Below, one piece after another: positions 25,626-61,800 of a DNA stretch of 64,000 nucleotides. The translations under genes were made by a program, and so were the position numbers. Source of the DNA: Bugula neritina (lineage: Eukaryota; Animalia; Bryozoa); the NCBI GenBank assembly GCA_964035545.1, contig OZ037765.1:34806080-34870079 (forward strand), written 5' to 3'. The stretch's first letter is position 1; each line of letters starts with the position of its first letter. The notes beneath the pieces were generated by a model. The model ran no database searches. It had not been told where the DNA came from and saw only the letters and a list, made by a program, of their open reading frames with translations.

Positions 25626-25806
25626 ATGGGTCAACGTAAATCTCGACCTCAGCCTACACCTGCACCTCGAACTCCACCTACACCCCCACCTCCACTTACA
25701 CCTACATCTAGACCTGCACTTAGACCTAGACCTACCCCTGCACCTCAACCTCCACCTACACCTCGAACTCTACCAACACCTACATCTAGATCTCAACCTA
25801 CACCTG
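25626..25806 (+). CDS. First coding exon of the LRR-Roc-COR-caspase gene: MGQRKS plus Pro/Thr-rich stalk
   Basis: ATG at 25626, donor G/GTTAGT at 25807; phase 1 fits the next exon. Confidence 0.7.
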
Positions 25807-28800: not shown

Positions 28801-31800
28801 ATACTGCTAGCTAGTATTTAGTGACTATTCATACTACTAGCTAGTATTTAGTGACTATTCATACTGCTAGCTAGTATTTAGTGACTATTCATACTGCTAG
28901 CTAGTATTTAGTGACTATTCATACTGCTAGCTAGTATTTAGTGACTATTCATACTGCTAGCTAGTATTTAGTGACTATTCATACTGCTAGCTAGTATTCA
29001 GTGACTATTCATACTGCTAGCTTGTATTTAGTGTCTATTCATACTGCTAGCTAGTATTTAGTGACTATTCATACTGCTAGCTAGTATTTAGTAACTATTC
29101 ATACTGCTAGCTATAGTATTTAGTGACTATTCATACTGCTAGCTAGTATTTAGTGACTATTCATACTGCTAGCTAGTATTTAGTGACTATTCATACTGCT
29201 AGCTAGTATTTAGTGACTATTCATACTGCTAGCTAGTATTCAGTGACTATTCATACTGCTAGCTTGTATTTAGTGTCTATTCATACTGCTAGCTAGTATT
29301 TAGTGACTATTCATACTGCTAGCTAGTATTTAGTAACTATTCATACTGCTAGCTATAGTATTTAGTGACTATTCATACTGCTAGCTAGTATTTAGTGACT
29401 ATTCATACTGCTAGCTAGTATTTAGTGACTATTCATACTGCTAGCTAGTATTTAGTGACTATTCATACTGCTAGCTAGTATTTAGTGACTATTCATACTG
29501 CTAGCTAGTATTTAGTGACTATTCATACTGCTAGCTAGTATTTAGTGACTATTCATACTGCTAGCTAGTATTTAGTGACTATTCATACTGCTAGCTGTAT
29601 TTAGTGACTATTCATACTGCTAGCTAGTATTTAGTGACTATTCATACTGTTAGCTAGTATTTAGTGACTATTCATACTGTTAGCTAGTAGTTAGTGACTA
29701 TTCATACTGCTAGCTTGTATTTAGTGTCTATTCATACTGCTAGCTAGTATTTAGTGACTATTCATACTGCTAGTTAGTATTTAGTGACTATTCATACTGT
29801 TAGCTAGTATTTAGTGACTATTCATACTGTTAGCTAGTAGTTAGTGACTATTCATACTGCTAGCTTGTATTTAGTGTCTATTCATACTGCTAGCTAGTAT
29901 TTAGTGACTATTCATACTGCTAGCTTGTATTTAGTGTCTATTCATGCTACCAGCTAGTATTTAGTGACTATTCATACTGCTAGCTAGTATTTAGTATTAT
30001 AGTATATAGAATGATACTGTAATAAATATGATATCCTATCACCAAATCATCTATCTAGTTCTCAATCTATCATATATTAGTATTTAGGTTATCTTTAGAG
30101 TTATCTTTGTTTTCATATCTGTATGTTATGTTACAGCATATCTTCACTGGAGAATCTTGAGGTATTGAATATATCATTTAATAGCCTATCTGAAAGTCTA
30201 CCTGAAGGTCTACCTGACAATATATTCACATCCTTACTATCATTGAGAGAGTTGAACATGAGGCGCTGTGAACTGTCAACTCTACCAAACAGGTGTGTAT
30301 TATATTATAGTGTAGAATGATACTGTAATATATATAATATCTCATCAGTAACTCAGCAACTGTCTGTATACATAGCAAAGGTTTCTACAGTTACACTCAG
30401 GTTGAAGATATTCTGTTGAGACTTAAAGAATCCATGACACACTTTACTTATATAGCATGAAAATATTCATCTATACCTTAGCTATCATCTAATCATCCTT
30501 TTAAGGGTGGATGGCTAGACTACTTTGTTTTATAACAAGTTTAGTGCATGCATGTCCAAAAAACTTTCGGATTTCTGAGCTCTCAGTACACACGTATTAC
30601 GCCGCTTCCGGTCGGCTTCGAGTCCTAGTTACTATGTAACTAATAGTAATAATTGCATACTTTCCACAGCGTGTTATTTTTAGCCACTGCAACACATAGG
30701 TCAATCACTGAACTGGCATACAATTTAAAACATAGAGTACAACTATGCCCAATGAAAAAAACAAATGCTACCATTTTATCATTCATATTAAGAGCTAAAG
30801 TTACTTCCGTTAGAAATTTTAAGCATCGGAAAAATCAAATAGCCTCACCTCCACGATGTAATTAGAACGGGTGGTTAGGTACGGCGATAACACGATATTG
30901 TTAAAAGAAATTAGCTAAATCCAACGAGTGGTAAACTTTTCTATAAAACATTACAAATAATTATGTAACTTATTACACTGCCTTACAAATAGATTATCAT
31001 TACCGTAACCGGATATTACCAATATAACGCGTGCCTAGTAGTACTACTAGTAGTAGTCGCTCGCTATCTGTATAAATTCGATTTCATGTTGCCATTGGAC
31101 TCTAACGAACAAACTTATTACTTATATTACTAGTTACACTTACTGTGAACATGACTACACGAGTGGTTTCTAGCTCTAAAGGCAAATGCAAAAGAAGAAT
31201 GTGTGAAGCTGCAATGTGTTCGTACAAAGAAAAGCACCTGTTTAAATGGCCTGCTGATACTCATACTGTGTGTGGTGAAAAATGGACCAAGTTTGTCAAT
31301 GTGAAAAGAAAAGATTTTCTGCCTGATAACAACTCTCGTTTGTGTTTTCAGCATTTTAATGATGAACAATTTACAAACATGGGCATGTATAAAGCAAAGC
31401 TCATTAACATGTAAGTGAATAACTCCCTCAAACTCATATTGATACTCATACTGATATACTGATGCAGTGATTGTGACACTGACTGTGATAGAATTAGACG
31501 ATAATGATGGTTCTTTTGATGTTGATTTTCAACAACAAGTATAACTATAACTATTACGTATTACTAAAAGTTGGTATAAGTCAATAGGATCGTCATGACC
31601 GTGTTGATTCAATTTCATGTGATTATCACTTTGAAAAACTTGCAAGTACAAGTTTGCATTTATGATTTACACGATAACCATTATTGTAAGGGAATTCATA
31701 ATGGTGATAATATGAAAGACTTATAATTATCAGAATGTGTCATAGTCACTTGGATACATACCATTAATATTATTATATTAATATTATGATTCATACGCAC

Positions 31801-43800: not shown

Positions 43801-46800
43801 ATAATGTAGGGCTGTATAAAGTTGTGTTAGCCCACCTGTCAAACTGCTACCATTTTTGGTCGTGCAAATTCTAATGCTATTATACTGGTAGGGTTTGTGT
43901 TTGTAGCTTTTAGTCTCGTTTCTAATATTTATTATCATAGAGGTTAGTAGTCTCTATGATAGAACTTACATATGACTCAATGTCACCATTTGATTCCTCA
44001 CACTGCTTGCAATGTGGGTAGGCCTACTCAGTGTCTCAGCTATGGACATGTCTTTGCCATTTCTTTGCCTTTATCAGTGTCCTCCTCTCCCTAGATAATA
44101 TCTCTTGGTTCTCACTGTGAATATATATCTCTGTTTCTTGAGCTCACTCTAGCACTCAATACCAACCATATGAATCTCAGACAAATTAGTATGTTGCTGT
44201 CCACACCATGTAACAGATCTTTCATACCTGTATGTTATGTTACAGCATGTCTTCACTGAAGAATCTTGAGGTATTGCATATATCAAGGAATAACCTATCT
44301 GAAGGTCTACCTGACAATATATTCACATCCTTACTATCATTGAGAGAGTTGAACATGGAGAACTGTAAACTGTCAACTCTACCAAACAGGTGTGTACTAT
44401 TATATTATAGTGTAGAATGATACTGTAATATATATAATATCAGTAGAGATATAGGGCCCCCTCCAGGCCACTTTTTCCCCACCGACGAGCCTATGGCTCA
44501 TCGGCGTGAAAAAAGATTGCCTTGAGGAGGCCCTATATCTCTACTCTAAATTATTTTATTATCGTTTTATTGAAAGTTGTATTCAAAAAAAGTTATTTTA
44601 TTGAGGAATATAAAACTTGTCTAATCCTGCCTATACCTCCCATTATTTTTCGAAGAAGATAAGTCTAAAGTAATAAAGCCGTGAGGTTTTTGCCAACCTT
44701 TACTTTATATTGTTGTTTCAAGAAAATAAGATTCTAAAACTTAAAGCTTTAATAATTTAATCTTGAATCATTGGTATTGCGGCAGATTCCATTATATTAC
44801 TATCGGACGTCGAGGGGTCACTAGCATTAAAGGATTGCTCTATCTTGTCTAATAAATGGCCATTTAGGTCAAACACACATAATATTGTGTTTTTCCAAGC
44901 ATGCATTGACAAAAAGCATTTGACCAAAGGTAGAAAAAGTTAGTTGAAGTTGAGGGTGTAGATTGGTAACAGCCAAAACGCCGATTTTGAAATGAGCTGG
45001 GAACTGTGACGTAACAGCGCCAGCATTCCTGCTGGTCACGTGACTATACAAATGAATAACTATAGAAATATGACTGTGAGATGTGATCTTTCAGCTTGTA
45101 ATTTGTATATTTATAGAAGTGCAAATGTGAATTATCTTAATCTATAGTTTTTTGACATTTTAAATAACACGTATGTAATAACATTAGGCTATATTTTGCT
45201 TGTAACCATTAGAAAAAAGCATTGCAAAAGCATGCATTCTTTAGGATGAATGCCTGCGATCGATCTAAACTAGGTCAGATTGTGCAATATTACGGGCGCA
45301 CCAAAGTTGACCTATATAGCGCACTGTAACTGCTTGAGCGTTATTGGTTGATATTGTGCTCAGCAACCTTGAATACTAGCGTTATAGTTAGCACGTGCAG
45401 CATAGTTACTGGCGTTCACACGTCACGTATTAGGCTATTCTTTTTCATGGCTGAAAATTTTACCTCCCTCAAAATTGGAATTTTGAAAAGCTGTTTTCTA
45501 GGCACATATCCCTTTGCAAAGTCACAATTGTTTGCATACACATTAAATTATAGTTCATAATTATAATGTGATTGTAATAAACTAAGATTGAGCAATCCTT
45601 TAATAGGTGTCATTCCGATAGACGAATGTTTAGTTTCGTTATATCGTTTTACTAAATCTTTTAATACGTCTATATATCTATAGGTATTATTCGCCGAAAA
45701 ATATTTAAACATTCGCTCTTTCATAGTTCTATTCCACCTTTCTACTACGGTAGACTTTTCTTCATTTTCCGTAGAATATAAGTCTATTAAGGACTTTACA
45801 TCTTTATTATAAAACTCTTTTTCCTTGTCAACCCACAAGTGTCGCGGCTTACGACGGGTTAAAATAGTTTTTAAAGCTAAAGCCGTCACTTTTCCGGTCT
45901 TATTTTTTAAGGGTATCATCCAACCGTATTTAGAAAACACGTCTATTACCGTTAATAAATATTTATAACCGTTATTTAATTTAGCGAATTCAGTCATGTC
46001 AACCAAGTCGGCTGCCCAAGTTTCATCAATACCCGATACCCAAACTCGTCTTTTACGAAAAATTTTTTGTACCGGTTTATGCAATTCTTCGGCTAACTCA
46101 TCCGTCCAGCGAAACCCCCACCCTAAACGCTTTTTCGTTCCTATTATCGCCGAGGCAATACGGCTGTGTCGTTGTTCGGTGGACGTAGGATTCGGTATAG
46201 CCTTTAGTTCGTTCAACATATTTTCATCACATATTTCGTTTCTAGTTTTAGTGTCTTTATTAATCGCGTAACATATGTCGTGTTTCATAGCTATAGCGTC
46301 CTCTCGATCTACCGGTTTACTCCATTCTTTAGGAGTCATGTCGTCATTAAGACGCTTATTTAATTTAGTACCGGGGCCTAAAAAATTATGACCGGGATAA
46401 TGTAATTCAATGGGTAAATTATTTATTAAATTACTCGCTAAACCCGACCCAACGAATGTAGTTTTTTTACATCCGCATTGACTACAATTACCGTAACCCA
46501 TTAGTCTATTATTTTTACTTACTCTCTCTCCGTAATTGAGAGTTTTAGTTTTAATTTTACACTTACAACAATACATTTATTATAGTAAATGGATATAATA
46601 AATTTATCGTGGAAAAACGAAATTAATCGTGATAATAATCCGTCACTCCCTAAAAGTATAAGGGGCGTTATCGTTGGAAAATCGGGGTGCGGTAAAACTA
46701 CGTTACTTTGTAACTTATAATTACAACCTAATTGGCTCGATTACAATAAACTTATGGTTTACGGTAAGAGTCTCGATCAACCCGTATATAATATTATGTG

Positions 46801-49800
46801 AAAAGCTTTCGAGCTCGGACTATCTAAAGAAAATTTTTTAGAAATATTTAAAAACAGTGACACGATAATAAATTGTGGTATAAACGTAAATCATATTTCA
46901 AAAAATTATGCTATTCGTAACGGTAATATAAACGCTGAATTCGTTGAATCGAGTGATAAAGTTTACGACGATTTAGACGCTAATAATAAAAATTTAATAG
47001 TGTTTGACGATTTAATGTTGGAAAAACAAAACGCTTGTGAAAAATATTACGTAAGAGGACGACATAGTAACGTTGATTGTTTTTATTTATCACAAAATTA
47101 TTTTAAGCTACCCAGGCAATCTATTCGTGAAAACGCGAATTTCTTTTGTTTATTTCCTCACGATGGTAAAAACTTGAGTGATTTACATCGAGATCACGTG
47201 ACTGGAGATATGCCTTTACGAGAATTTAAAGAGTTTTGTTATAAAGGTTAGGAAAAACCTCACGGCTTTATTACTTTAGATTTATCTTCTTTAAAAAACA
47301 ATGGAAAATATAGGCACGGATTAGACGAATTTTATATTCCTCAATAAAATAACTTTTTTTTAATACAACTTTCAATAAAACGATAATAAAATAATTTAGA
47401 GTAGAGATATAGGGCCTCCTCAAGGCAATCTTTTTTCACGCCGATGAGCCGGAAAAAGTGGGCTGGAAGAGGCCCTATATCTCTACTAATATCTCATCAG
47501 TAACTCAGCAACTGTCTGCATGCATAGCAAAGGTTTTTACAGTTACACTCAGGTTGAGGAGAGTCTGTTGAGACTAGAGCTAAGCTGTCAGCGTGTCAGC
47601 ATTTAAGCCATTTTCCATGATATTGTTTTAATTTTGTGCATTTCCCGCCTGTTTTAGCTGTGAGTCATTCAGGAAATCGAATTGCATTTTTGTTGGTTAG
47701 AAGAGATAGGATTTCTACTTGATAGCTTACCATGTGTACAGTACTAATTCCTGTGTACTCTGAAGTTAGGATATTTCAGATCAGCTATCAGATTTACAAA
47801 TTGTTAGATGCTACAGAATTTGGGGTTTAGAGTTCAGACAATAGTTTGTATACAAACACTGCACCCCACGACCCCAAGCTATGTGCTGCATTCATCAATC
47901 CCCATCAGATTTTATCCCATGCAGTTGTTGGTTGTTGAGTGCTGATTGGCTCAGTTGTTCTACTTGTATCATGTGCTGCAAGCCTGAATGTTTTCTCTTT
48001 TACTGGAAGTTTATCTATTCAGTTTAAAAAATTACAATTATATACATGAAGGGTGGTTTGCCTTCTTCCATCTATAAGTACAACATGTAATTGGTTGTTG
48101 AATGCAAACAAGTCTGACCCTCCTACCTGTCAGGGACTTGAAGTGAATATCTGTCAACCATTGGTTGGTGAGTAATATCTCTGTGCATAACACAGATGTT
48201 GCAGGATTTAATTCACTTAGCCATATCTCTACACAGAGCTGGCCACCAGAAGTGGTGCTGAGTCCTCACTCTACACTCATGTACCCCCTGATAGCCCTTG
48301 TGACACATTTCTAAATATCCTGACCGTATAAAGGCTAGGGAATGCACACCCTGGACTTGTACATTAGCATCTTATTCATCTTGCTGTCTGTCGTGTCCGA
48401 CTATGACTTCTGGTGTATCATTAGTCTCCATCTGGGTCTGTCAAGTGACAGCATTTGCCATTTGCTGAGAGATATCCCCTTGTCTTTAAGGTTGCGTTTA
48501 ATGGTATCTTTGTAACGGAGCCTCGGTCTGCCAATGTCACGGGAGCCTTCTGTTAGCTGTGAGTATAAAACCTGTTTTGGGATCCTGGTGCTGTCTAATC
48601 TGTTGACATGTCCGGCCCATCTTAGATTTCTTTGGATGAGGGTGTCATATAGACTGGTAATGTTGGTTTTCTGAAGGATCTTCATATTAGATACAAAGTG
48701 CCACCATTTCACTGACAATATCTGTCTTAGTTGATTCATAAGAAAGGCATTCAGCTTGTGTGCCGTGATCTTATAGACTGTCCATGACTCCACTCCATAT
48801 AGCAGTGTAGGTAAAACAATGGCTTGGTAGACTGCACATTTTGTCTTGATTGTCAGGTCCCCGTTATCCCAAACCCTTTCTCGTAGCCTTCCGAAAGTTT
48901 GTGACGCTTTTGACATTCTCAATTGGAGTTCTTGATCAAGTTTGTTGTTGTTTGTGATGGTTGAGCCAAGGTATTTGAAGTTCTTGACTGTGTTGAGGAT
49001 TTCTCCATCTATACTGATCTTTTCTCCCTCATCATATTCTCCTGGTGGTGGTTGATACATCATCTCTGTTTTGGTTATATTTATCTTTAGTCCAAAGTCT
49101 TTGGCAGATTTTGCAAAACGGGTGATGATTTCTTGAGCCTGCTGATGGTAGTGAGCAACAAAGGCAGTGTCGTCAGCAAACATGAGTTCTCTGATGAGTA
49201 CCTTTCTTGTTCTGGTGGAAGATTTGAACTGATTGATATTGAACAAGTCAGCGCCAGGTCTTGATTGAATCCATACACCCTTATCATAGCCATCAAAAGC
49301 ATGGTTCATAACCATAGTGAGATAGATAGAGAACAGGGTCGGAGCCAGCACACAGCCTTGTTTTACACCGTTTGTGATCTCGAATGGTGCTGAGAGACCT
49401 CCTTTTAGATTGACAGAGGCTTTCATTCCCGTATGTAGGGCTGCAATCAGGTTAGTGAACTGGTCTGGGCAGCCAAGCTTTCTTAGAACCATCCACAATG
49501 TCAATCGGTTTACTGTGTCGAATGCCTTGGTGAAATCGATAAAGATCATGTATAGAGGCATATTCTGTTCTATGCATTTTTCCTGGATCTGTCTTAATGA
49601 GAATATCATGTCTGAGGTGCCTCTACCTGCCCGAAAACCGCACTGAGCTTCTGGGAGAAACTGTTCTATGTGTTGCGTGAGTCTATTGAGTAATATACGG
49701 GCAAATACCTTTCCTGGGATAGAGAGTAGTGAGATGCCACGGTAATTTCCGCAGATGCGCCTGTCTCCTTTCTTGAAGATCGTGACTAGCTGTGCATCTT

Positions 49801-52800
49801 TCCAATCCTGTGGTACCTCTTCGTTTCTCCATGACTCTGTGATGAGTTCAGTAAGCCTCAGTATAAGCTCCGCACCACCTTTCTTCAACAGCTCAGGATG
49901 AATACCATCAACTCCTGGTGACTTCCTATCAGAGAGCGCATTTACAGCTCTCATAACCTCTGTGACATCGGGACATTCATTCATCCATTCTTGGGTTGCC
50001 TGTTGGTGTATGTGACTGGTGATGTTAGGGTCCACATTTCCTGTTTCATTTAAGAGTGTTCGGAAGTGCTCTGTCCATCTCTGCATCAAATCATCTGTCT
50101 GGGTGAGGAGGGTGTGGTTGTCCTTGTCATACAGTTGGTCTGGGTGGTTTACACGTGGACCCCAGACTGCTCGCAGGTTTTCGTAGAAGCCTCTCGTGTC
50201 ATTTCGGTTAGCCAGTTCCTGCAGTTCAGCTGCCTTGTCTTGCCACCATTTGTTCTTTAGTTCACGGCATTTCTTTTGAAGTGCTCTGTTACATTCCTTG
50301 TACCTTCCTTTGGTTTTCCTGGTCAATCGGTTCATGACAGCAGAACGTGCTAGGTTCCTCTCACTTATTAGGTCTTGTAGTTCTATGGAGTGTTCATCAA
50401 ACCAGTCCCCGTGTTTTCTGCCAACAGTGCCTAGCTTCTCCTTCGATGTTTCATAAACTGTGTTCTTGAAGCTTTTCCATGCGTCGTCAAGTGTTCCAGG
50501 TGTTCTCAAGCTCAGTTTCTCACTTAGGGCTGTTTTCAAGTCATCAAGTATTTCCTTATCTTTCAGTTTGTTGACGTTGAGCTTTTTACTTGGTTGTTTA
50601 GACTTCTTCATTTTCCTTTTGATGATGAGGCTAGTGCGTGATTTTATCATGATATGGTCTGTGTTGCAGTCTGCCCCACGCATTGCTCTGGTGTCATGTA
50701 TGTCCTTCAGATCACGTTGACGGGTGATGACATAGTCAATCAGGTGCCAATGCTTGGATCGGGGGTGCATCCATGAGTTCTTGTGGGCTGGCTTATGTTT
50801 GAAAAAAGTGTTGGTGATTGCAAGTTGAAATTGGTTGCAAAGGTTCAGAAGACGCTCACCATTAGCGTTGATTTTCCCAGAGCCGTGCATTCCTATGACA
50901 TTTTTCCAGGTAGAAAAGTCGTCACGTACCCGAGCATTAAAATCACCCATAAGGATGATTTTGTCAGAGATATGGATATCTCTCAGCGTCTGGTTGAGCT
51001 GGTCATAAAAGCCATCAATACTTCCAGGAGCATTGGTCATTGTTGGGGCATAGATTGTTATGATGGTACAGTAACGGTCATGTTTCAGTGGTAGTCTCAA
51101 TGTCATAATTCTGTCATTCACAGGTTTAGGATCCTCGCAAAGTTTTAATGTGATGTTGTTGCTGATGGCTAGTCCTACGCCTGATTCGCTCTTCTCTGAT
51201 GATGGTTTCCCACTCCAGTAGATAGTATTTCCACTCTCCTCACGTATACAGCCGCTCTCAGCAAATCGCACTTCACTCAGTGCAGCAATGTCTATTTGGT
51301 AGTTTGACAGCACCTTCGATATAATGGCGCTTCTTCTTTCTGGTCGTTCAGCGTGTGAACGGTCTAGCATCGTTCTGATGTTCCATGATGCCAGGTTAAG
51401 TTTAATATGGGGTTGGACCTTTTTATCCTAGGCGACGTCCGGCCAGTATGAGTATTCTTTCTTTTGTGACTTCATGATACAACATGTGCTGGCAAGAATT
51501 TGTGAGGCTACTGTGTGGTTTGCCAGTTGGCACAGCAGCCCTCTCCACTATGCAGTGTCAATTGAGCTGGCAAGGATTATCCAAGACGAGCTCAGACTCT
51601 GAGTAGTCGCAGTGACCGGCCGGATATAATTCATCAAGTGAAGAATAACCGCCCTTGCAGGATGTCACAAGCCTGTCTTTTCTGTCTGGGTGTAGCTCCC
51701 ATAGATCCCTGAGCCGTTAGCCTGGTAGAACCAGTTACCAGTGGTGACCACGAGGAGGTGCCTCAGAGTCTTGATGATTGGTGACTTCACCAGTTTTTAC
51801 TTCGTCGCCTCAGCATCCTTGGAGTGTCTTCCTTCACTTTAGTAAGTTTGGCAGACATCCACCACCATTATTATAAACTGGTAAATAATGTAGGACTGTA
51901 TAAAGCTGTGTTAGCCCACCTGTCAAACTGCTACCATTTTTTGGTCGTGCAAATTCTATTACTTTGATACTGATAGGGTCTGAGTTTGTAGCTTTTAGTC
52001 TCGTTTCTAATATTTATTATCATAGCACTCACTCTAGCACTCCATACCAACCATATGAAACTCAGGCAGATTAGAATGTTGCTGTCCTCACCATGTAACT
52101 GATATTTCATATACCTGTATGTTATGTTACAGCATGTCTTCACTGAGGAATCTTGAGGTATTCAATATATCAAGGAATAACCTATATGAAGGTCTACCTG
52201 ACAATATATTCACATCCTTACTATCATTGAGAGAGTTGAACATGGAGAACTGTGAACTGTCAACTCTACCAAACAGGTGTGTATTATATTATAGTGTAGA
52301 ATAATACTGTAATATATATATATAATATCTCATCAGTAACTCAGCAACTGTCTGCATACATAGCAAAGGTTTCTACAGTTAACACTCAAGTTGAGGATGT
52401 TCTGTCAACATTTAAAATTATTCAAAGTTATTCTATAAAACTCATTTGTTAACTGGCATTTTAACTTAACCAGTTCTAAGTCTATGATTTGTCTATACAA
52501 GAAACTGCTTTCTCTGTTTGTTAGAGTTATCTTCCCTCTAATATAACCAACTGTCACTCACACTTCTGTTATGTCATATTGGACCTCTGCAGTTCAAACC
52601 AAGCTGTCACACAACTTATTTAAATTCTCTCCAAATTCTCATTTACTACTTGACTACTAACTGACTTCGTTAATTCTCAGTCTATGATTTACCAAATCCT
52701 AGACTACAGAATGAGTTCATACCTGTATGTTGTTTTACAGCATATTTTCACTGAAGAATATTGAGGTATTGAATATATCAGATAATAACCTATCTGAAGG

Positions 52801-55800
52801 TCTACCTGACAATATATTCACATCCTTACCATCATTGAGAAAGTTGTACATGAATTACTGTGAACTGTCAACTCTACCGAACAGGTGTGTATTATATTAT
52901 AGTGTAGAATGATACTGTAATAAATATATATATTGTTCTTGCAAATTATATTACTTTGATACTGGAAAGGTCTGAGTTTGTAGTTTTTAATCTCGTTTCT
53001 AATATATATTATCATATCACTCACTCTAGCACTCCATACCAACCATATGAAACTCAGGCAGATTAGAATGTTGCTGTCCTCACCATGTAACTGATATTTC
53101 ATATACCTGTATGTTATGTTACAGCATGTCTTCACTGAGGAATCTTGAGGTATTCAATATATCAAGGAATAACCTATCTGAAGGTCTACCTGACAATATA
53201 TTCACATCCTTACTATCATTGAGAGAGTTGAACATGTTGCGCTGTAAGCTGTCAACTCTACCAAACAGGTGTGTATTATATTATAGTGTAGAATGATACT
53301 GTAATATATATAATATCTCATCAGTAACTCAGCAACTGTCTGTATACATAGCAAAGGTTTCTACAGTTACACTCAAGTTGAGGATAGTCTGTTGAGACTA
53401 GAGCTAAGCTGTCAGCGTGTCAGCATTTTCCATGATATTTTCTTAATTCTGTGTATTTCCTGCCTGTTTTAGCTGTGAGTCATTTAGGAAGGCGAATTGC
53501 ATTTTTGTTGGTTAGAAGGGATAGGATTTCTACTTGATAGCTTACCATGTGTACAGTACTAATTCCTGTGTACTCTGAAGCTAGGATATTTCTGATCAGC
53601 TATCAGATTTACAAATTGTTAGATGCTACAGAATTTGGGGTTTAGAGTTCAGACAATAGTTTGTATACAAACACTGCACCCTACGACCCCAAGCTTTGTG
53701 CTGCATTCATCAATTCCCATCAGATTTTATCCCATGCAGTTGTTGGTTGTTGAGTGCTGATTGGCTGAGTTGTTCCGCTTGTATCACGTGCTGCAAGCCT
53801 GAATGTTTTCTCTTTTACTGGAAGTTCATTTATTCAGTTTAAAAAACCACAATCATAAACATGAAGGGTGGTTTGCCTTCTTCCATCTATAAGTAGAACA
53901 TATAATTGGTTGTTGAATGCAAACAAGTCTGACCCTCCTACCTGTCAGGGACTTGAAGTGAATATCTTTCAACCATTGGTTGGTGAGTAATATCTCTGTG
54001 CATAACACAGATGTTACAGGATTTAATTCACTTAGCCATATCTCTACACAGAGCTGGCCACCAGAAGTGGTGCTGAGTCCTCACTCTACACTCATGTACC
54101 CCCTGATGGCCCTTGTGACACATTTCTAAATATCCTGACTGTAGAAAGACTAGGGAATGTACACCCTGGACTTGTACATTAGCATGTTATTATAAGCTTG
54201 TAAATAATGTAGGACTGTATAAAGCTGTGTTAGCCCACCTGTCAAACCGCTACCATTTTTTGGTCGTGCAAATTCTATTACTATTATACTGATATGGTCT
54301 GAGTTTGTAGTTTGTAGTGTCGTTTCTAATATTTATTATCATATCACTCACTCTAGTACTCAATACCAACCATATGGATCTCAGACAGATTAGAATGTTG
54401 CTAACCTCACCATGTAACAGATCTTTCATACCTGTATGTTATGTTACAGCATGTCTTCACTGAAGAATCTTGAGGTATTGAATATATCATGGAATAAGCT
54501 ATCTGAAGATCTACTTGACAATATATTCACATCCTTACTATCATTGAGAAAGTTGAACATGAGTTACTGTGAACTGCCAACTCTACCAAACAGGTGTGTA
54601 ATATATTATAGTGTAGAATGATACTGTAATATATATATAATATCTCATCAGTAACTCAGCAACTGTCTGCATACATAGCAAAGGTTTCTACAGTTAACAC
54701 TGAGGTTGAGGATACTCTGTTAGGACTTAAGCTAAGCTGTCAGCATTTAAGCATTTTCCATGATAATTTTTTATTTCTGTGTATTTTCCACCTGCTTTTA
54801 GCTGTGAGTCATTCAGGGAGGTGAATTGCATTTTTGTTGGTTAGAAGGGATAGGATTTCTACTTGATAGCTTACCATGTGTACAGTACTAATTCCTGTGT
54901 ACTCTGAAGCTAGGATATTTCAGATCAGCTATCAGATTTACAAATTGTTAGTTGCTACAGAATTTGGGGTTTAGAGTTCAGACAATAGTTAGTATACAAA
55001 CACTGCACCCCACGACCCCAAGTTTTGTGCTGCACTCATCAATTCCCATCAGATTTTATCCCATGCAGTTGTTGGTTGTTGAATGCTGATTGGCTGATTT
55101 GTTCTGCTTGTATCACGTGCTGCAAGCCGGAATGTTTTCTCTTTTGCTGGAAGTTCATCTATTCAGTTTAAAAAACTACAATTATAAACATGAAGGGTGG
55201 TTTGCCTTCTTCCATCTATAAGTACAACATATAATTGGTTGTTGAATGCAAACAAGTCTGACCCTCCTACCTGTCAGGGACTTGAAGTGAATATCTGTCA
55301 ACCATTGGTTGGTGAGTAATATCTCTGTGCATAACACAGATGTTGCAGGATTTAATTCACTTAGCCATATCTCTACACAGAGCTGGCCACCAGAAGTGGT
55401 GCTGAGTCCTCACTCTACACTCATGTACCCCCTGATAGCCCTTGTGACACATTTCTAAATATCCTGACCGTATAAAGGCTAGGGAATATAAAGGTCTGAG
55501 TTTGTAGCTTTTAGTCTCGTTTCTAATATGTATTATCATAGCACTCACTCTAGTACTCAATACCAACCATATGGATCTCAGACAGATTAGAATGTTGCTA
55601 ACCTCACCATGTAACAGATATTTCATATCTGTATGTTGTGTTACAGCATATCTTCACTGAGGAATCTTGAGGTATTGAATATATCAGATAATAACCTATA
55701 TGAAGGTCTACCTGACAATATATTCACATCCTTACTATCATTGAGAGAGTTGAACATGGAGAACTGTGAACTGTCAACTCTACCAAACAGGTGTGTATTA

Positions 55801-58800
55801 TATTATAGTGTAGAATGATACTGTAATATATATATAATATCTCATCAGTAACTCAGCAACTGTCTGCATACAAAGCAAAGGTTTCTACAGTTACACTCAA
55901 GTTGAGGATATTCTGTCAACATTTAAAATTATTCAAAGTTATTCTATAAAACTCATTTGTTAACTGGCATTTTAACTTAACCAGTTCTCAGTCTATGATT
56001 TGTCTATACAAGAAACTGCTTTCTCTGTTTATTAGAGTTATCTTCCCTCTAATATAACCAACTCTGTCACTCACACTTCTGTTATGTCATATTGGACCTC
56101 TGTAGCTCAAACTAAACTGTCACACAACTTATTTAAAGTTTCTCCAAATTCTCATTTACTACTTGACTAATAACTGACTCCGTTAACTCTCAGTCTATGA
56201 TTTGCCAGATCCTAGGCTATAGAATGAGTTCATACCTGTATGTTATGTTACAGCATGTCTTCACTGAGGAATCTTGAGGTATTGGATATATCAAGGAATA
56301 ACCTATCTGAAGGTCTACCTGACAATATATTCACATCCTTACTATCATTGAGAGAGTTGGACATGGGGTACTGTAAACTGTCAACTCTACCAAACAGGTG
56401 TGTATTATATTATAGTGTAGAATAATACTGTAATATATATAATATCTCATCAGTAACTCAGCAACTGTCTGCATACATAGCAAAGGTTTCTACAGTTACA
56501 CTCAGGTTGAGGATATTCTGTTGAGACTAGAGCTAAGCTGTCAGCATTTAAGCATTTTCCATGATAATCTTTTATTTCTGTATCATGTGCTGCAAGCCGG
56601 AATGTTTTCTCTTTTACTGGAAGTTCACCTATTCAGTTTAAAAAAGTGCAATTATAAACATGAAGGGTGGTTTGCCTTCTTCCATCTATAAGTACAACAT
56701 ATAATTGGTTGTTGAATGCAAACAAGTCTGACCCTCCTACCTGTCAGGGGCTTGAAGTGAATCTTTCAACCATTGGTTGGTGAGTAATATCTCTGTGCAT
56801 AACACAGATGTTGCAGGATTTAATTCACTTAGCCATATCTCTACACAGAGCTGGTCACCAGAAGTGGTGCTGTGCCCTATCTCTACATTCATTTACCCCC
56901 TGATGGCCTTGTGGCACATTTCTAAATATCCTGACTGTAAAGACTAGGGAATATACACTCTGGACTTGTACATTAGCATATTATTATAAGCTGGTAAATA
57001 ATGTAGGACTGTATAAAGCTGTGTTAGCCCACCTGTCAAACTGCTACCATTTTTTGGTCGTGCAAATTCTAATACTTTTATACTGATAGGGTCTGAGTTT
57101 ATAGTTTGTAGTGTCGTTTCTAATATTTATTATCATATCACTCACTCTAGTACTCAATACCAACCATATGGATCTCAGACAGATTAGAATGTTGCTAACC
57201 TCACCATGTAACAGATATTTCATATATGTATGTTGTGTTACAGCATGTCTTCACTGAAGAATCTTGAGGTATTGAGGATATCATGGAATAACCTATCTGA
57301 AGGTCTACCTGACAATATATTCACATCCTTACTATCATTGAGAGGGTTGAGCATGCAGAGCTCTGAACTGCCAACTCTACCAAACAGGTGTGTATTATAT
57401 TATAGTGTAGAATGATACTGTAATAAATATAATATCTCATCAGTAACTCAGCAACTGTCTGCATACATAGCAAAGGTTTCTACAGTTACACTCAGGTTGA
57501 GGATATTCTGTTGAGACTAGAGCTAAGCTGTCAACGTGTCACATTTAAGCCATTTTCCATGATAATTTTTTAATTTTATGTATTTCCCCGAATTGCATTT
57601 TTGTTGGTTAGAAGGGATAGGATTTCTACTTGATAGCTTACCATGTGTACAGTACTAATTCCTGTGTACTCTGAAGCTAGGATATTTCAGCTCAGCTATC
57701 AGATTTGTGACACATATCTAAATATCCTGACTGTAGAAAGACTAGGGAATGTACACCCTGGACTTGTACATTAGCATATTATTATAAGCTGGTAAATAAT
57801 GTGGGACTGTATAAAGTTGTGTTAGCCCACTTGTCAAACTGCTACCATTTTTTGGTCGTGCAAATTCTATTACTTTGATACTGATAGGGTCTGAGTTTGT
57901 AGCTTTTAGTCTCGTTTCTAATATTTATTATCATAGCACTCACTCTAGTACTCAATACCAACCATATGAAACTCAGGCAGATTAGAATGTTGCTAACCTC
58001 ACCATGTAACAGATATTTCATATCTGTATGTTGTGTTACAGCATGTCTTCACTGAAGAATCTTGAGGTATTGAATATATCAGGGAATAACCTATCTAAAG
58101 GACTACCTGACAATATATTCACATCCTTACTATCATTGAGAGAGTTGACCATGAGGAACTGTAAACTGCCAACTCTACCAAACAGGTGTGTATTATATTA
58201 TAGTGTAGAATGATACTGTAATAAATATATCATCAGTAACTCAGCAACTGTCTGCATACATAGCAAAGGTTTCTACAGTTACACTCTGGTTGAGGATATT
58301 CTGTTGAGACTTAAGCTAAGCTGTTAGTAATTTCTATGACATCACAGCTGCCATAAGGCTTTGGTTTACTGGTCATAAAATAATTTAAGCTTTCATTAGT
58401 TTATGTATTTGAATTTTTAATAATTTGGCTCAAAGTTTGGGTATCTAATAAATTTTATCTAGCAAAAATAGAAGCAGAATAAGTGGTAGTAAAATTATCA
58501 TTGAACGTCAACACTGACTCAACCATGTTTTTTTACACTTTCATGCAGCTGGTAGAATTGAAAACACAATTGTTTTCTTTTTTGTTCAATGCAAGACAAC
58601 TTTGTACGGGTTGCATAGGAAGGAGTAGTTTTTTATTCAATTCCATGGAAGAGTAGCACATTGGATAAAGTTATGTTAGCAGATTTAACTAAATACTTTT
58701 ATTCATTTTCACCCTTACTATTGTAAGTTATGTAGATAATACCAAATCTAATTTTAATTAGTGGAGTATTAGATATACTACCCAGCTGCAGGCTAGGATA

Positions 58801-61800
58801 GCTATACAATAACTATTTACAGTGTGCAGTAATATATATATTATGTGGTATAAACAGAAATAATTATTAAGATATGATTATTAGATTGTGTGAACAATGC
58901 ATAGAATACTGTGATATCTGGTAACAACATTTACCAGATATCCACAAAATATATATTTCTATATCAACAAACCCTGCCTTTGTTTGAACTCTCTATTATT
59001 TGTGATGTTTACCAAAGCAGTTCATACAAAGGTCAAGGATACATTCTTTAACTATAATATATAACCATTCTATAACTTTCTATATTACCCATTAATGTAA
59101 TGAATATATTTGCAATGTTAACTTCTAGACATTATCACTCAACAAAGAGGGTGCTCTTATTTTTGCATGAAGTCAAATTTTTGATATAAAAGTTATCATG
59201 TGATAGTAAAGACACTACAACTTGTACTGACAGTGTATAGTGTTCTATTTACTAGCATGCAGAGTCTACAGAAGTTGGAGATACTGGAAATACCAGATAA
59301 TAAGTTCACCAGTTTACCATCTCCTGTGTGCCCACTGAGTAGTCTGCAGAAACTGAATATATCCTCCAATAAGTCCCTGACATCCTTAGATCCTGAGATA
59401 CTACAGCTAACTCAACTTCGTACACTGTATGTATATGGTTGTAATGCTCTCACCTCTCCTCCACCAGAAGTATGTGAGAGAGGAGTAGATGCTGTGAGAC
59501 AATATTACACAGACTTGGCTGAAGGTGCTGGTAGAAGTCTTCCATTTGCTACTATAGCTGTGCTGGGTAATACGATGGCTGGGAAGACCAGTCTAATCAG
59601 AACATTACAGAATGCTGGCCGAAAGAGAGTTCTGACCGACAGAGGACCAGATGCTGTGAGAGATGAGACAACAAAGGTGTTTAATGTTGAAGAAGTGGAG
59701 GTGGATGGTACAGTACTCCGTGTCATTGATATGGGAGGCCAGGAGGTCTACCATATCACCTATCAACTGACACTGAGACAGAACTGTATTCCAGTCATAG
59801 TAGTCAACATGGAACAGTATGAGGAGATTTCAAGTGAATCAACACACAGAGAAGCTGTTAGAAGATTAGCCTTTGATTACATGTCTCACCTCTATCTGGC
59901 TAACCCAACTCTGGGTGCTCCAAAACTTATCTTCACACATAAAGATAAGTTTCAAAATGCAGAATTCCAGAAGCTTCGAAAAAACTTTCTAGAAACTTCC
60001 AATCAACTGTGTGAGGAAATGATTAGAGAAGAGAAAGCATTGGGTGGAAAATTTGCTCAAATCAAACATTTTAGTGAATCAACTGAAGGAGTCTTTCTTG
60101 GTGAGGACATTTATGAGGTGGGGAAAGATGATACGTATGAAGTGTTTGACCTGATCAAGGAGTCTCTTCTTCAAAGCAGTCAACATTTTGTGAAACCTTT
60201 ACCTTTGGTCTGGGAGGAAATGAATGAAAAAGTGCTCTCTATTTCCTCTGTGTACAGCACTTTTGATGAGATACTGAACTATGTGCAAACCGAACTTCAA
60301 CACATTGAGTCAAGTCAGCTGGACATAATCCTCACACACATGCATGACTGCGGCAAAGTCTTGTGGTATAAAGATATCAGCTCTCTCCGGCCATACATAT
60401 TCCACAAAATTTCACAAGTCACCAAACTTCTCTGTGTCTTGTATCATCATGATCCTAGCATATGGCAGAGTAGAGTTGACAAGTTCCAGCCATGTTTTTC
60501 AGAGGACGGGATGCCTGTTGAAAAAGAAGACTTTGAGAGATTTGTTAATCATTTCACTGAGACTGGTTTGATGATGCAATGCCTTCTCATTCATCTGGTT
60601 AAACAAGAAACATTATTTACCAGTCTGGAAGACGTAGAAGTTGCTGTTTGCTTGCTTCGCACATTCCGTTTGTTATATGGTCCTTTACCTGGTGATTCCA
60701 AGGAGCCCTGCTTTATTGTTCCCCAGTTTGCTAACGACCTCTTTGATACCTCTCACTCCTCACCAAAAAACATGCTCCTTCGAGTTGAAACTAAATTCAA
60801 TGGTCTAGCCCTGCCACACTATGTTTACCACCAGATGATTGTTGGGTTGTTGGAGCTGTTTCCAGACGAGTTTGCCGTGATTGAAGTGAGAAGAAATGGA
60901 GCCAATGTCTATCAAGATGGGATCTACACACAGCTGGTACACGACTATACATCTAGAAAGGTGTTGCTCTACGTATCATCTAATGCTGCCAACATCAGCA
61001 GAATGTGGGAGAGACTCATCACCGCCAACAAAAACATCCTTAGACATGTTCTAGAAACTTGGACGGCAAGTAGACCAGTCACTACATGCTACTGTGCTCA
61101 CTGTCTTCTGCTAGGACTTCCTTGTCCTAAGAAAGTGATGAATCCTCCATGGTGTCTTCGTTCCTTGAAACATTCCACACCACGTCCCGGACTGTGTAGT
61201 GGATCTTCAACAACTCTGTGTGGTTATGAGGAGATACCGAGTGCTTTTCTCTATCCATGTATGTTTACATTCAGTTTGAAGTGAATATCTAGTTTTGCTC
61301 GCTTTCAGCAGTCTTTCCACTATTTATGTTCTGATAGTAATAAACATATAACTTCCATGTGGTAACTGACAGTTTTTCATTCTCTAGGCAGTCCTCTCTC
61401 TCCAGAAGAAGCTGATAACATAAAAGAACGCGTCAACAAACTGAGATCTGCAAGAGAAGAGACTGCTTCAACTGTCCCTGGTATGATCAGTTTTCTATCA
61501 TAAACTGTCACTGTTAGAAGTAACATCCTCTGCCTGAGCTCAGTCATATGTAAACAGCAATAGACAAGAACTCATGACACTCAGTTATATAGAACAAGAT
61601 CACTCAGCTTCAGTTATTGTAATTGATCTATATAATTACTGATTAAAAGTGGAAAATATGATTCTGTTCCTGGTTTACAGTCATTTTGATACTTAGTATA
61701 TCTTTTACTTATTAGCACTGAACATATCTCCTTTTTTGTTTATTTTAGTACTGGGTGAAGATGATAACCTCAGTGAATGCTCTGATGTAGAAGAGGAAGG

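What the first reader, a model, noticed from the sequence alone, without database searches (positions are those of the whole stretch)
44246..58185. Hypervariability concentrated at solvent-exposed beta-strand positions, with almost no synonymous change
Seen in exons 1-10: the residue after LEV[LF] is N,H,N,N,N,N,N,D,R,N and the residue after IS is F,R,R,D,R,W,D,R,W,G. In the second repeat xLxMxx reads ELNMRR, ELNMEN, ELNMEN, KLYMNY, ELNMLR, KLNMSY, ELNMEN, ELDMGY, GLSMQS, ELTMRN. The scaffold (DNIFTSL, TLPN) and flanking introns are nearly invariant. By eye I found only about 3 synonymous differences (CCG exon 4, AAG exon 5, GGA exon 10). Established: these x positions of LxxLxLxxN form the concave ligand-binding face in VLRs and plant NLR/RLK LRRs. 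Inference: diversifying selection or targeted diversification, typical of pathogen or allorecognition receptors.
Basis: partly seen in the sequence, partly recalled or inferred. Interest (0 to 1): 0.85.

Follow-up and report, generated by a model that had tools for sequence, protein, structure and literature searches.

The report
Hypervariable LRR exon array, bryozoan Roco-caspase
Ten near-identical exons build the leucine-rich-repeat sensor arm of a moss-animal gene that also carries a GTP switch and a cell-death protease, and their amino-acid changes pile up on the predicted ligand-binding face several times faster than silent or intron changes, as in fast-evolving immune or self/non-self receptors.

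Summary
Ten phase-symmetric exons (nine of 144 nt, one of 156 nt) each encode two LRRs. Of 48 codons, 21 vary, and only three differences are purely synonymous. One correction: exon 1 lies at 30137-30292, outside the stated range.

The exons form the sensor arm of an LRR-Roc-COR-caspase gene (window 25626 to about 64118). It is one of four tandem paralogues that carry 10, 3, 7 and 3 such exons, in a family of at least 66 scored (174 candidate) copies in a bryozoan genome.

- **Selection on the concave-face codons.** At the xxLxLxx codons fixed in advance, dN/dS is about 10 within this gene and 4.5 across 22 exons. The remaining codons are near neutral (1.06 across the 22 exons).
- **Comparison with introns.** Replacement change at these codons runs about 2-5 times (pairwise) to 4-11 times (minimum changes per site) the flanking-intron divergence.
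- **Codon models.** They pick codons 5, 11, 14, 16, 34, 36, 38, 39 and 41. All but codon 5 sit at positions 3, 5, 7, 8 or 10 of LxxLxLxxNxL.
- **Recombination.** It inflates the likelihood-ratio test, but the observed values exceed all 14 null simulations.

Diversifying selection is supported. Targeted or somatic diversification and combinatorial splicing remain untested.

The closest known analogue is the exon-shuffled LRR-ROCO genes of brown algae. This scan has already reported the same gene family on other DNA of this genome.

The parts
25626..25805 (+). Proposed exon 1: ATG, MGQRKS (myristoylation-like MGxxxS) followed by a Pro/Thr-rich tail; donor G|GTTAGT
   Evidence: Read from the sequence. 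The same MGQRKS start with a Pro-rich tail of variable length stands upstream of all four tandem paralogues. The region is 92% conserved with paralogue B. There is no RNA support.
26995..27223 (+). Proposed exon 2: N-terminal cap of the LRR arm (…IPPNINTLFPHLTHLRVSG…HNWT), ending AG|GTATTA in the same phase as the cassette exons
   Evidence: Sequence and frame. The region is conserved 85-92% with paralogues B, C and D. The phase fits exon 1 and E1. This is an inferred model.
27289..29995 (.). 30-nt minisatellite in the intron before E1
   Evidence: It stands at the same intron position in all four paralogues, with different lengths.
30137..30292 (+). Cassette exon E1 (156 nt, two LRRs, 12-nt in-frame insertion SLPE)
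44246..44389 (+). Cassette exon E2 (144 nt, two LRRs)
52133..52276 (+). Cassette exon E3. Together with E4 it forms a two-exon block duplicated as E7-E8.
52741..52884 (+). Cassette exon E4, the most divergent. It differs from its duplicate E8 at 16/144 sites, against 20/461 in the shared intron.
53125..53268 (+). Cassette exon E5
54450..54593 (+). Cassette exon E6
55647..55790 (+). Cassette exon E7
56254..56397 (+). Cassette exon E8
57244..57387 (+). Cassette exon E9
58042..58185 (+). Cassette exon E10
59256..61258 (+). Large exon: about four more LRRs, the Roc GTPase (GNTMAGKTS, DMGGQ, THKD) and the COR-homologous region. Acceptor is tttactAG|C, in the same phase as the cassettes.
   Evidence: Pfam Roc 30.0 bits (cut-off 27) and LRR_4. 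PDB hits to CtRoco, LRRK1 and LRRK2 over LRR+Roc. Relatives that align over 92-99% of its length carry COR-A. GT..AG joints from a cassette-exon end to 59256 occur in contigs of run X1. Sequence read.
62047..62295 (+). Open frame holding the first caspase exon (start of the p20 part); exon borders not set
   Evidence: Pfam Peptidase_C14, E 0.0011; tblastn with Watersipora P0046 and P0015
62904..63152 (+). Open frame holding the caspase exon with SHG (catalytic His) and FHACSG (catalytic Cys in an ACSG context)
   Evidence: Pfam Peptidase_C14, 41.1 bits against a cut-off of 21.4; translation
63738..64000 (+). Last caspase part; the match runs on to about 64118, just past the window's end
   Evidence: Pfam; tblastn 63777-64118 on window+L002
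34748..41323 (+). GC-rich (about 56%) Gypsy-type LTR retrotransposon (gag, protease-RT-RNaseH, integrase frames) inside the E1-E2 intron
   Evidence: ORFs; composition; read by eye, no family search run
44440..47423 (.). About 3-kb element with long terminal inverted repeats, inserted 50 nt after E2
   Evidence: (D14)
48401..51370 (-). LINE-type endonuclease/reverse-transcriptase ORF (989 aa, open) in the E2-E3 intron
   Evidence: read by eye

Best explanation
The ten exons are a germline tandem array of interchangeable two-LRR cassettes. They build about 20 of the roughly 25 repeats in the sensor arm of a single-chain LRR-Roc-COR-caspase protein.

**How the array arose.** It grew by unequal crossing-over of units made of an exon plus its flanking intron. 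One example is the two-exon block E3-E4, copied to E7-E8. The array is still in flux: neighbouring paralogues carry 10, 3, 7 and 3 cassettes.

**What changed after duplication.** The leucine/asparagine scaffold stayed fixed. About nine codons per cassette, at positions 3, 5, 7, 8 and 10 of LxxLxLxxNxL, accumulated amino-acid replacements. These positions form the concave beta-sheet face and its adjoining rim. Replacement there runs about 7-10 times the synonymous rate and several times the intron rate. This is positive diversifying selection on a ligand-binding surface.

**Shown:** the anatomy, the excess of replacements, its position in the motif, the copy-number variation, the family size, and transcription and splicing of the family.

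**Inferred:** a ligand (microbial, or from another colony) binds the variable face. This releases the Roc-COR GTPase switch, which dimerises and brings the C-terminal caspases together, leading to proteolysis or cell death. An N-terminal MGQRKS signal may anchor the protein to a membrane.
For: - **Anatomy.** There are ten exons with identical splice signals and symmetric phase. They lie upstream of Roc (Pfam 30 bits) and caspase exons that carry SHG and ACSG. Watersipora RefSeq models of 1413-1419 aa show the same LRR-Roc/COR-caspase order.
- **Tree-free selection tests.** In this gene, dN 0.33 against dS 0.033 at the ten a-priori xxLxLxx codons, and overall dN/dS 4.7. Across 22 exons the ratio is 4.5 at those codons and 1.06 elsewhere. 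The bootstrap of pN-pS excludes 0. Fisher test of replacement against silent steps, x-sites against the rest, gives p = 7e-5.
- **Codon models.** M0 omega is 9.1. The M2a vs M1a LRT is 74 for this gene, 16.7 and 49.7 for the two halves on their own trees, and 157 for 22 exons. The selected sites are 5, 11, 14, 16, 34, 36, 38, 39 and 41.
- **Intron yardstick.** The duplicated block's intron differs at 4.3%, while E4/E8 differ at 11.1%, nearly all replacements. Minimum steps per site are 0.09-0.28 in introns, 0.10 at synonymous sites and 1.05 at x-site replacement sites.
- **Selection rather than a mutational hot spot.** At the hypervariable codons only 2 of 43 steps are synonymous, against about 19% expected.
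- **Register.** It was fixed by alignment to solved LRRTM, VLR and repebody chains.
- **Copy-number flux.**
- **Family size.** 174 candidates; 66 were scored and nearly all are open. At least 41 of the 66 have a caspase exon downstream.
- **Transcription.** Run X1 has exon-biased contigs and GT..AG joints, cassette to 59256 and cassette to cassette.
- **Independent variants.** Metagenome contigs carry 22 further cassette variants with the same variable positions.
Against: - **A single tree is a poor model.** The exons are mosaics or carry recurrent changes: 20 of 45 site pairs fail the four-gamete test.
- **The LRT is poorly calibrated under recombination.** With free recombination and omega at or below 1, 6 of 14 null simulations passed the chi-square threshold, reaching up to 33. 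The LRT p-values should not be taken at face value. The case rests on the size of the effect: LRT 75 against a null maximum of 33, and M0 omega 9.3 against at most 1.06.
- **dS in this gene is uncertain.** It rests on about 3.5 changes and is lower than the intron divergence, so part of the high ratio comes from a small denominator.
- **No 3D model of the arm.** The single-exon fold failed, so surface exposure is inferred from the motif.
- **Unknown exon usage.** I have no evidence on which cassettes are included in mature mRNA. The joints have only 20-25 nt on the shorter side and are ambiguous among cassettes.
- **No ligand, no population data and no functional test.**
Confidence: 0.72

Rival explanations
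1. Combinatorial use of the cassettes. Because all cassettes share phase, size and splice signals, cells could include different subsets (exon skipping, or Dscam-like choice). One gene would then yield many sensor arms. This would add to germline diversity rather than replace it.
For: - Every exon from exon 2 to the Roc exon is in the same phase and a multiple of 3 nt long, so any subset keeps the frame and the LRR register.
- Splice signals are near-identical.
- Alternative splicing of LRR cassette exons is reported for brown-alga ROCO genes (PMC11378527).
- Each exon is bracketed by a weakly complementary AT-rich 21-nt pair.
Against: - There is no isoform evidence. The contig joints are ambiguous among cassettes, and database proteins are all unspliced genomic ORFs.
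- A cassette-to-cassette joint shows that serial inclusion occurs in the family (table 5c).
- The complementary elements are AT-rich, 76-81% matched, and could be chance carried along by duplication.
Confidence: 0.2
2. No positive selection. The high dN/dS would be an artefact of relaxed constraint on surface residues, together with gene conversion that erases silent differences and with recombination-inflated tests.
For: - dS within this gene (0.023) is below intron divergence (0.05-0.13).
- There is strong homoplasy.
- Null simulations with recombination inflate the LRT.
- The non-x codons are near neutral across 22 exons (omega 1.06).
Against: - Relaxed constraint caps the replacement rate at the neutral rate. 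At the x codons, dN (0.33-0.35) is 2.5-7 times intron divergence and 4-11 times intron steps per site.
- E4/E8 diverged 2.6 times faster than the intron they share.
- Conversion would erase replacements along with silent changes.
- M0 omega of 9.3 lies far outside the null range of 0.28-1.06.
Confidence: 0.05
3. Targeted or somatic diversification. A directed mutational or gene-conversion process (VLR-like or AID-like) would write variation into these codons, in the germline or in somatic cells.
For: - Variation is sharply localised, with multi-nucleotide differences within codons.
- At least 179 candidate matches to an exon-plus-flank probe, the scored ones all on the same chromosome, could act as donors.
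- Mosaic patterns are present.
Against: - All 23 cassettes in 174 kb are on the coding strand with intact splice sites, unlike non-coding VLR donor cassettes.
- At the hypervariable codons silent changes are under-represented (2 of 43 steps), which a mutational hot spot would not produce.
- No somatic data exist. Only contigs were available, and they drop rare variants.
Confidence: 0.03

Closest known systems
Exon-shuffled LRR-ROC-COR (ROCO) candidate immune receptors of brown algae (Ectocarpus, Saccharina; Zambounis et al. 2012, PMC3341825; Teng et al. 2024, PMC11378527)
   Same: - An LRR arm lies N-terminal to Roc-COR.
- LRRs are encoded by small, equal-sized, phase-2 cassette exons in tandem.
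- Exons are duplicated and shuffled, and the gene family is clustered and expanded.
- Site models find positive selection at a few x positions on the concave face.
   Different: - The cassettes here are 144 nt with two LRRs each, not 72 nt with one.
- This is an animal gene, so the similarity is almost certainly convergent.
- A complete caspase is fused to the C-terminus; the algal genes are LRR-ROC-COR only.
- No inverted or inactivated intronic cassettes were seen in 174 kb.
- Alternative splicing is documented in the algae and untested here.
MFHAS1/MASL1 and the animal ROCO family (LRRK1/2, DAPK1)
   Same: LRR followed by Roc and COR. RefSeq names the Watersipora relatives 'MFHAS1 homolog'. 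PDB hits to CtRoco, LRRK1 and LRRK2 cover LRR+Roc.
   Different: The vertebrate genes are single-copy, have no caspase domain and no hypervariable cassette array. Identity is low: phmmer aligns only the LRR+Roc part.
Plant NLR/RLP resistance genes and lamprey VLRs (hypervariable xxLxLxx positions)
   Same: Replacement substitutions are concentrated at solvent-exposed x positions of the LRR beta-strand. Repeat number varies. The cassette profile aligns in register with solved VLR and repebody chains.
   Different: The switch is Roc-COR, not NB-ARC or NACHT. There is no sign of VLR-type somatic assembly from non-coding cassettes. The architecture looks cytosolic, with no signal peptide seen in the proposed exon 1.
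Fungal NLR-like STAND proteins with highly conserved internal repeats (HET-E/D/R WD40; Paoletti et al. 2007; recalled, not read here)
   Same: Near-identical tandem repeats, with hypervariability and positive selection at a few surface positions, repeat shuffling by unequal exchange, a link to cell death, and allorecognition in a modular organism.
   Different: The fungal repeats are WD40/ANK/TPR within one exon, with a NACHT/NB-ARC switch, in fungi.
Mammalian NLRP LRR exons (two LRRs per phase-symmetric exon; PMC2747839)
   Same: One exon encodes two consecutive LRRs, so exons are modular and can be skipped in frame.
   Different: NLRP exons are not near-identical copies with hypervariable positions. 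The caspase is recruited through adaptors, not fused.

Membership tests
Leucine-rich repeat ('typical' LRR) solenoid | Tandem LxxLxLxxN/CxL motifs of 20-30 residues | tested here: met
   Each cassette holds two motifs: LEVLxISxNxL and LRxLxMxxCxL, with periods of 25 and 23 residues. The profile of 22 cassettes hits LRRTM (E 1e-14), VLR-A and repebodies in register.
Leucine-rich repeat ('typical' LRR) solenoid | Variable positions lie on the concave beta-sheet in a 3D structure | tested here: inconclusive
The AlphaFold2 model of one 47-aa cassette was wrong and low-confidence (two helices, pLDDT 69). The mapping rests on motif register plus PMC2747839.
ROCO proteins | Roc GTPase domain with P-loop, DxxG and N/TKxD | tested here: met
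   Pfam Roc 30.0 bits against a cut-off of 27. GNTMAGKTS, DMGGQ and THKD can be read in the ORF. PDB hits to CtRoco, LRRK1 and LRRK2.
ROCO proteins | COR domain directly after Roc | tested here: inconclusive
   Pfam gives no COR hit on this gene's exon. Relatives that align over 92-99% of its length at 38-42% identity carry PF16095 COR-A, as do Watersipora P0046 and P0015.
Caspases (Peptidase_C14) | p20/p10 fold with a catalytic His (SHG) and Cys (QACxG) | tested here: met
   Pfam 41.1 bits against a cut-off of 21.4 on the exon at 62904-63152, with weaker hits on two more exons. SHG is present and the Cys sits in FHACSG, not QACRG. Activity was not tested.
Brown-alga-type exon-shuffled LRR-ROCO receptors | LRRs on equal-sized phase-2 cassette exons, with shuffling and positive selection on the concave face | tested here: met
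   Cassettes are 144 nt, phase 2, and number 10/3/7/3 in four paralogues. The resemblance is in how it works; common descent is unlikely and was not tested.
Brown-alga-type exon-shuffled LRR-ROCO receptors | Alternative splicing of the cassette exons | not testable with these tools
   Only short contigs were available, and the joints have 20-25 nt on the shorter side, which is identical among cassettes.
Variable lymphocyte receptors (VLR) | Somatic assembly of an incomplete germline gene from flanking non-coding LRR cassettes | tested here: not met
   All cassettes are ordinary exons with AG/GT borders on the coding strand of a complete gene. Somatic DNA was not examined.
NLR (NACHT/NB-ARC STAND) receptors | Central NACHT or NB-ARC ATPase | tested here: not met
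   The switch is Roc(-COR). Genome-wide there is only one weak partial NACHT match (33 bits, profile positions 3-47).
Dscam-type mutually exclusive exon clusters | One exon per cluster chosen per transcript, guided by docking and selector RNA pairing | tested here: inconclusive
   A cassette-to-cassette joint in RNA contigs argues for serial inclusion in the family. Only weak AT-rich complementary elements flank the exons.

The most novel reading that the evidence does not exclude
The cassette arrays of this family of more than 100 LRR-Roc-COR-caspase genes may be used combinatorially, through regulated exon choice or somatic exchange among the many near-identical cassettes. Individual cells or zooids would then display different sensor arms. 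Alternatively, or in addition, the family may be the long-sought fusion/rejection (allorecognition) system of bryozoans, wired directly to a death protease. Either would be an animal receptor system built on a Roco GTPase in place of an NLR.
Probability: 0.15. Interest if true: 0.9.

Novelty: new variant of a known kind. Interest (0 to 1): 0.66.

Why it matters
Hypervariable LRR faces under diversifying selection are the hallmark of plant resistance genes and lamprey antigen receptors. Cassette-exon LRR-ROCO genes were known only from brown algae.

Here the same design appears in a colonial animal, fused to a caspase and expanded to a large clustered family, in a genome where I found almost no NACHT signal. 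I found no paper describing it in the library searched.

If these proteins are receptors, they would be a one-piece alternative to the NLR-adaptor-caspase inflammasome. They would also give concrete candidates for bryozoan immunity, symbiont control or colony allorecognition, none of which has a known molecular basis. The nine selected codons per cassette say where to look for ligand contacts.

Tried and rejected
- **Tandem Repeats Finder.** It found nothing because the period exceeds 500 nt.
- **AlphaFold2 on one 47-aa cassette with a 22-row alignment.** It gave two helices at pLDDT 69, which is unusable. So no fold of the whole arm was made, and no search was run with a full-length model.
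- **Read laying on 55600-61300.** All four runs are contigs, and paralogues at 95% or more pile up. The joints confirm splicing into 59256 but cannot say which cassette is the donor. Run X14, the only certain RNA run, covers only parts of the Roc exon.
- **Protein searches.** The search with the Roc-COR exon returned mostly single-exon ORFs, plus multi-exon gene models only from other bryozoans; the search with the cassette profile returned only unspliced genomic ORFs. No spliced transcript of this gene turned up.
- **Second fetch of paralogous clusters.** The selection tests therefore rest on 22-23 cassettes.
- **The chi-square p-values of the site-model LRT.** My own null simulations with free recombination show they are inflated. 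I report them only next to the null range.
- **Assembly artefact.** Rejected: each cassette has its own flanks and TE insertions, and independent metagenome contigs carry further variants.
- **Literature searches.** Searches for bryozoan MFHAS1 and for Roc-COR plus caspase found no description of this family.
- **Organism.** Run ids are coded, so the organism name rests on protein relatives. Bugula neritina is likely but not proven here.

Full report
**1. The observation**

A motif scan and a splice-signal scan find ten exons on the + strand:

| Exon | Window coordinates |
|---|---|
| E1 | 30137-30292 |
| E2 | 44246-44389 |
| E3 | 52133-52276 |
| E4 | 52741-52884 |
| E5 | 53125-53268 |
| E6 | 54450-54593 |
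| E7 | 55647-55790 |
| E8 | 56254-56397 |
| E9 | 57244-57387 |
| E10 | 58042-58185 |

- Nine exons are 144 nt. E1 is 156 nt because of a 12-nt in-frame insertion.
- All begin TTACAG|C and end AACAG|GTGTG.
- Each starts with the last base of a codon and ends with the first two bases of the next. Any number of them can therefore be spliced in series without changing the frame.
- Each encodes two LRRs: LEVLxISxNxL and LRxLxMxxCxL.

Two corrections are needed. Exon 1 lies outside the stated range. The introns are conserved only close to the exons: p = 0.05-0.08 within about 25 nt upstream and 45-110 nt downstream, but 9-13% over the 170 nt upstream. Several exons have unrelated flanks.

**2. What the exons belong to**

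Directly downstream, an exon starting at 59256 continues the LRRs. It carries a Roc GTPase, scoring 30 bits in Pfam against a cut-off of 27. The motifs GNTMAGKTS, DMGGQ and THKD are readable. A region homologous to COR follows. Three further open frames carry a caspase domain with SHG and FHACSG.

Upstream, I propose two exons:
- **Exon 1 (25626-25805).** It reads MGQRKS followed by a proline-rich tail. The same start stands before all four neighbouring paralogues.
- **Exon 2 (26995-27223).** Its donor is in the same phase as the cassettes.

The gene therefore spans about 38 kb. Its introns hold a GC-rich Gypsy element, a 3-kb element with terminal inverted repeats, and a LINE.

The nearest named relatives are RefSeq models from the bryozoan Watersipora subatra, 1413-1419 aa long, with the order LRR, Roc/COR, caspase. 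A Bugula neritina protein is 38% identical. The window's assembly is 216 Mb in 321 contigs. RNA runs that hold the locus are labelled 'symbiont metagenome' and 'organism A'. I take the organism to be a bugulid bryozoan. The species name is an inference.

**3. Family context**

- The Roc-COR exon has 174 candidate copies in the genome. 66 were scored, and 63 of those are open.
- At least 41 of the 66 have a caspase exon 1.5-16 kb downstream on the same strand.
- The cassette type studied here has at least 179 candidate copies, and the 42 scored matches all lie at 33.8-35.0 Mb of the same chromosome.
- In the 174 kb made of the window plus L002-L012, four tandem genes carry 10, 3, 7 and 3 cassettes. 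All are on the coding strand with intact splice sites. One has a 15-nt in-frame deletion.
- NACHT gives one weak partial hit genome-wide.

**4. Selection tests without a tree**

Before looking at the results, I fixed the ten codons at the x positions of xxLxLxx in both repeats: codons 8, 9, 11, 13, 14, 33, 34, 36, 38 and 39.

| Set (NG86) | dN | dS | dN/dS |
|---|---|---|---|
| This gene, ten x codons | 0.33 | 0.033 | about 10 |
| This gene, other 38 codons | 0.057 | 0.021 | 2.7 |
| This gene, all codons | | | 4.7 |
| 22 exons of four paralogues, x codons | | | 4.5 |
| 22 exons, other codons | | | 1.06 |

- Codon bootstrap of pN-pS: 95% CI 0.036-0.124 for this gene and 0.007-0.094 for the 22 exons.
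- Replacement against silent steps, x-sites against the rest, in the 22 exons: 41:2 against 32:20, Fisher p = 7e-5.
- Only 2 of 43 steps at the hypervariable codons are silent, against about 19% expected. This points to selection rather than a local mutational hot spot.

**5. Introns as a yardstick**

The block E3-intron-E4 was duplicated to E7-intron-E8:

| Segment compared | Differences |
|---|---|
| Shared intron | 20/461 (4.3%) |
| E3 vs E7 | 5/144 |
| E4 vs E8 | 16/144 (11.1%), 11 amino-acid differences |

Minimum changes per site:

| Site class | Changes per site |
|---|---|
| Alignable intron flanks | 0.09-0.28 |
| Synonymous sites | 0.10 |
| Non-x replacement sites | 0.19 |
| x replacement sites | 1.05 |

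The replacement rate on the variable face is therefore above the neutral rate by any yardstick available here. It is not merely above a depressed dS.

**6. Codon models**

PAML and HyPhy were not installed. I wrote a Goldman-Yang-type maximum-likelihood implementation (F3x4 codon frequencies; models M0, M1a and M2a) that runs on IQ-TREE topologies.

| Data set | Result |
|---|---|
| This gene | M0 omega 9.1; M2a vs M1a LRT 74; 18% of codons at omega about 30 |
| Half 1, own tree | LRT 16.7 |
| Half 2, own tree | LRT 49.7 |
| 22 exons | LRT 157; 19% of codons at omega about 16 |

In the 22-exon run, the sites with posterior above 0.99 are 5, 11, 14, 16, 34, 36, 38, 39 and 41. In motif numbering these are positions 5, 8 and 10 of the first repeat and 3, 5, 7, 8 and 10 of the second. 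The one extra site, codon 5, lies two residues before the first repeat.

**7. Recombination control**

The exons are mosaics or carry recurrent changes. 20 of 45 informative site pairs fail the four-gamete test, and Rm is at least 5 within 144 nt, with no dependence on distance. Upstream and downstream flanks group the exons differently.

I simulated 14 null data sets with omega at or below 1 and a separate random genealogy for every codon.
- The LRT ranged up to 33, and 6 of 14 passed 5.99. The chi-square p-values are therefore not trustworthy.
- The observed LRT (75.5 under the same procedure) exceeds every null value.
- The observed M0 omega (9.3) exceeds the null range of 0.28-1.06.

The conclusion rests on effect size and on the tree-free tests.

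**8. Structural placement**

A profile of 22 cassettes aligns in register with the repeats of solved LRRTM, VLR-A/B/C and repebody chains, with E down to 1e-14. In such repeats the aaLxLaa stretch is the concave beta-strand, followed by the C-terminal side loop (PMC2747839). The selected sites are x positions of that stretch and of the loop just after it.

A fold of a single cassette failed. The whole arm was therefore not folded, and the placement is by motif only.

**9. Expression**

In run X1, labelled RNA-Seq, contigs cover the exons heavily and the introns hardly at all. GT..AG joints link a cassette's 3' end to 59256. One contig passes from a cassette end directly into a cassette start (tables 2, 5, 5c).

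The shorter side of each joint is only 20-25 nt and identical among cassettes, and paralogues map together. This shows that the family is transcribed and spliced, with cassettes joined in series. It does not show which cassettes of this gene are used.

**10. Reading**

The best-supported reading is a germline cassette array. [quoted passage not shown] The immune or allorecognition role, and activation through Roc-COR dimerisation bringing the caspases together, are inferences from the domain order and from what is known of ROCO proteins and caspases.

**11. Comparison with what is known**

- **Closest described system:** the LRR-ROC-COR genes of brown algae. They have one LRR per 72-nt phase-2 exon, exon shuffling, positively selected concave-face sites and alternative splicing (PMC3341825, PMC11378527). 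The bryozoan genes differ in cassette size (two LRRs), in the fused caspase, and in being animal genes.
- **Not VLRs:** there are no non-coding donor cassettes.
- **Not NLRs:** there is no NACHT or NB-ARC domain.
- **Literature:** I found no paper describing this family in the library searched.
- **Earlier scan notes:** other reports of this scan describe the same family elsewhere in this genome. I used them as leads only. My NACHT search and cassette counts agree with them.

Noticed in passing
window 44440-47423: A roughly 3-kb insertion 50 nt after exon E2 has long terminal inverted repeats: the same 46-50-aa frame can be read inward from both ends. It carries an integrase-core ORF whose N-terminal part has a phospholipase-A2-like YxGPG...HDxxY motif, and a P-loop ATPase frame (GKSGCGKT). 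It may be a small Maverick/Polinton-like or other integrase-bearing DNA element.
   Followed up: no
window 34748-41323: A Gypsy-type LTR retrotransposon with long open gag and pol frames is 56% GC in a 35% GC genome. This suggests a recent arrival or a foreign composition.
   Followed up: no
window 27289-29995; also big-contig 76979-77096 (L003), 126425-126699 (L008), 159312-160372 (L011): A 30-nt minisatellite sits in the intron just before the first cassette exon in all four tandem paralogues. Its length ranges from about 0.1 to 2.7 kb.
   Followed up: partly
window 2960-5911, 9511-14085, 14474-15569: Three long minisatellite blocks lie upstream. The middle one has a very strong GC skew (+0.46 to +0.53) and gives spurious open frames of up to 1524 aa on the opposite strand.
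   Followed up: no
window 57123-57143 / 57410-57430, 57921-57941 / 58208-58228, 53002-53022 / 53291-53311 and others: Each cassette exon is bracketed by an AT-rich 21-nt element about 120 nt upstream (ATATTTATTATCATATCACTC) and a 76-81% complementary element about 23 nt downstream (GAATGATACTGTAATAAATAT). The pairing is weak and may be chance carried along by duplication. It could also loop out exons.
   Followed up: partly
window 25626-25643; big-contig 69937, 125264, 158242: All four paralogues start with MGQRKS, a consensus N-myristoylation signal, followed by a proline-rich tail whose length varies greatly, from about 10 to more than 70 residues.
   Followed up: partly
L008:6375-6503: One cassette of the third paralogue has a 15-nt in-frame deletion that removes the NxL part of its first repeat. 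Its splice sites are intact.
   Followed up: no
G000:C6:312551-312682: This is the only NACHT (PF05729) match in the whole 216-Mb assembly at E <= 1e-5, and it covers only the P-loop part. Canonical NLRs seem rare or absent, with the caveat that the search runs exon by exon in six frames.
   Followed up: partly
window 43534-43833, 48122-48421, 53937-54236, 55266-55565: The longer cassette units carry a fragment of a retroelement integrase zinc-finger region, read on the minus strand as ...HHFWWPALCRDMA.... The TE fragment was therefore duplicated together with the exon.
   Followed up: no
window 56369: Contigs of three runs read A instead of T at the first base of hypervariable codon 39 of E8 (Tyr to Asn). 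This is either an allele or a cross-mapped paralogue.
   Followed up: no
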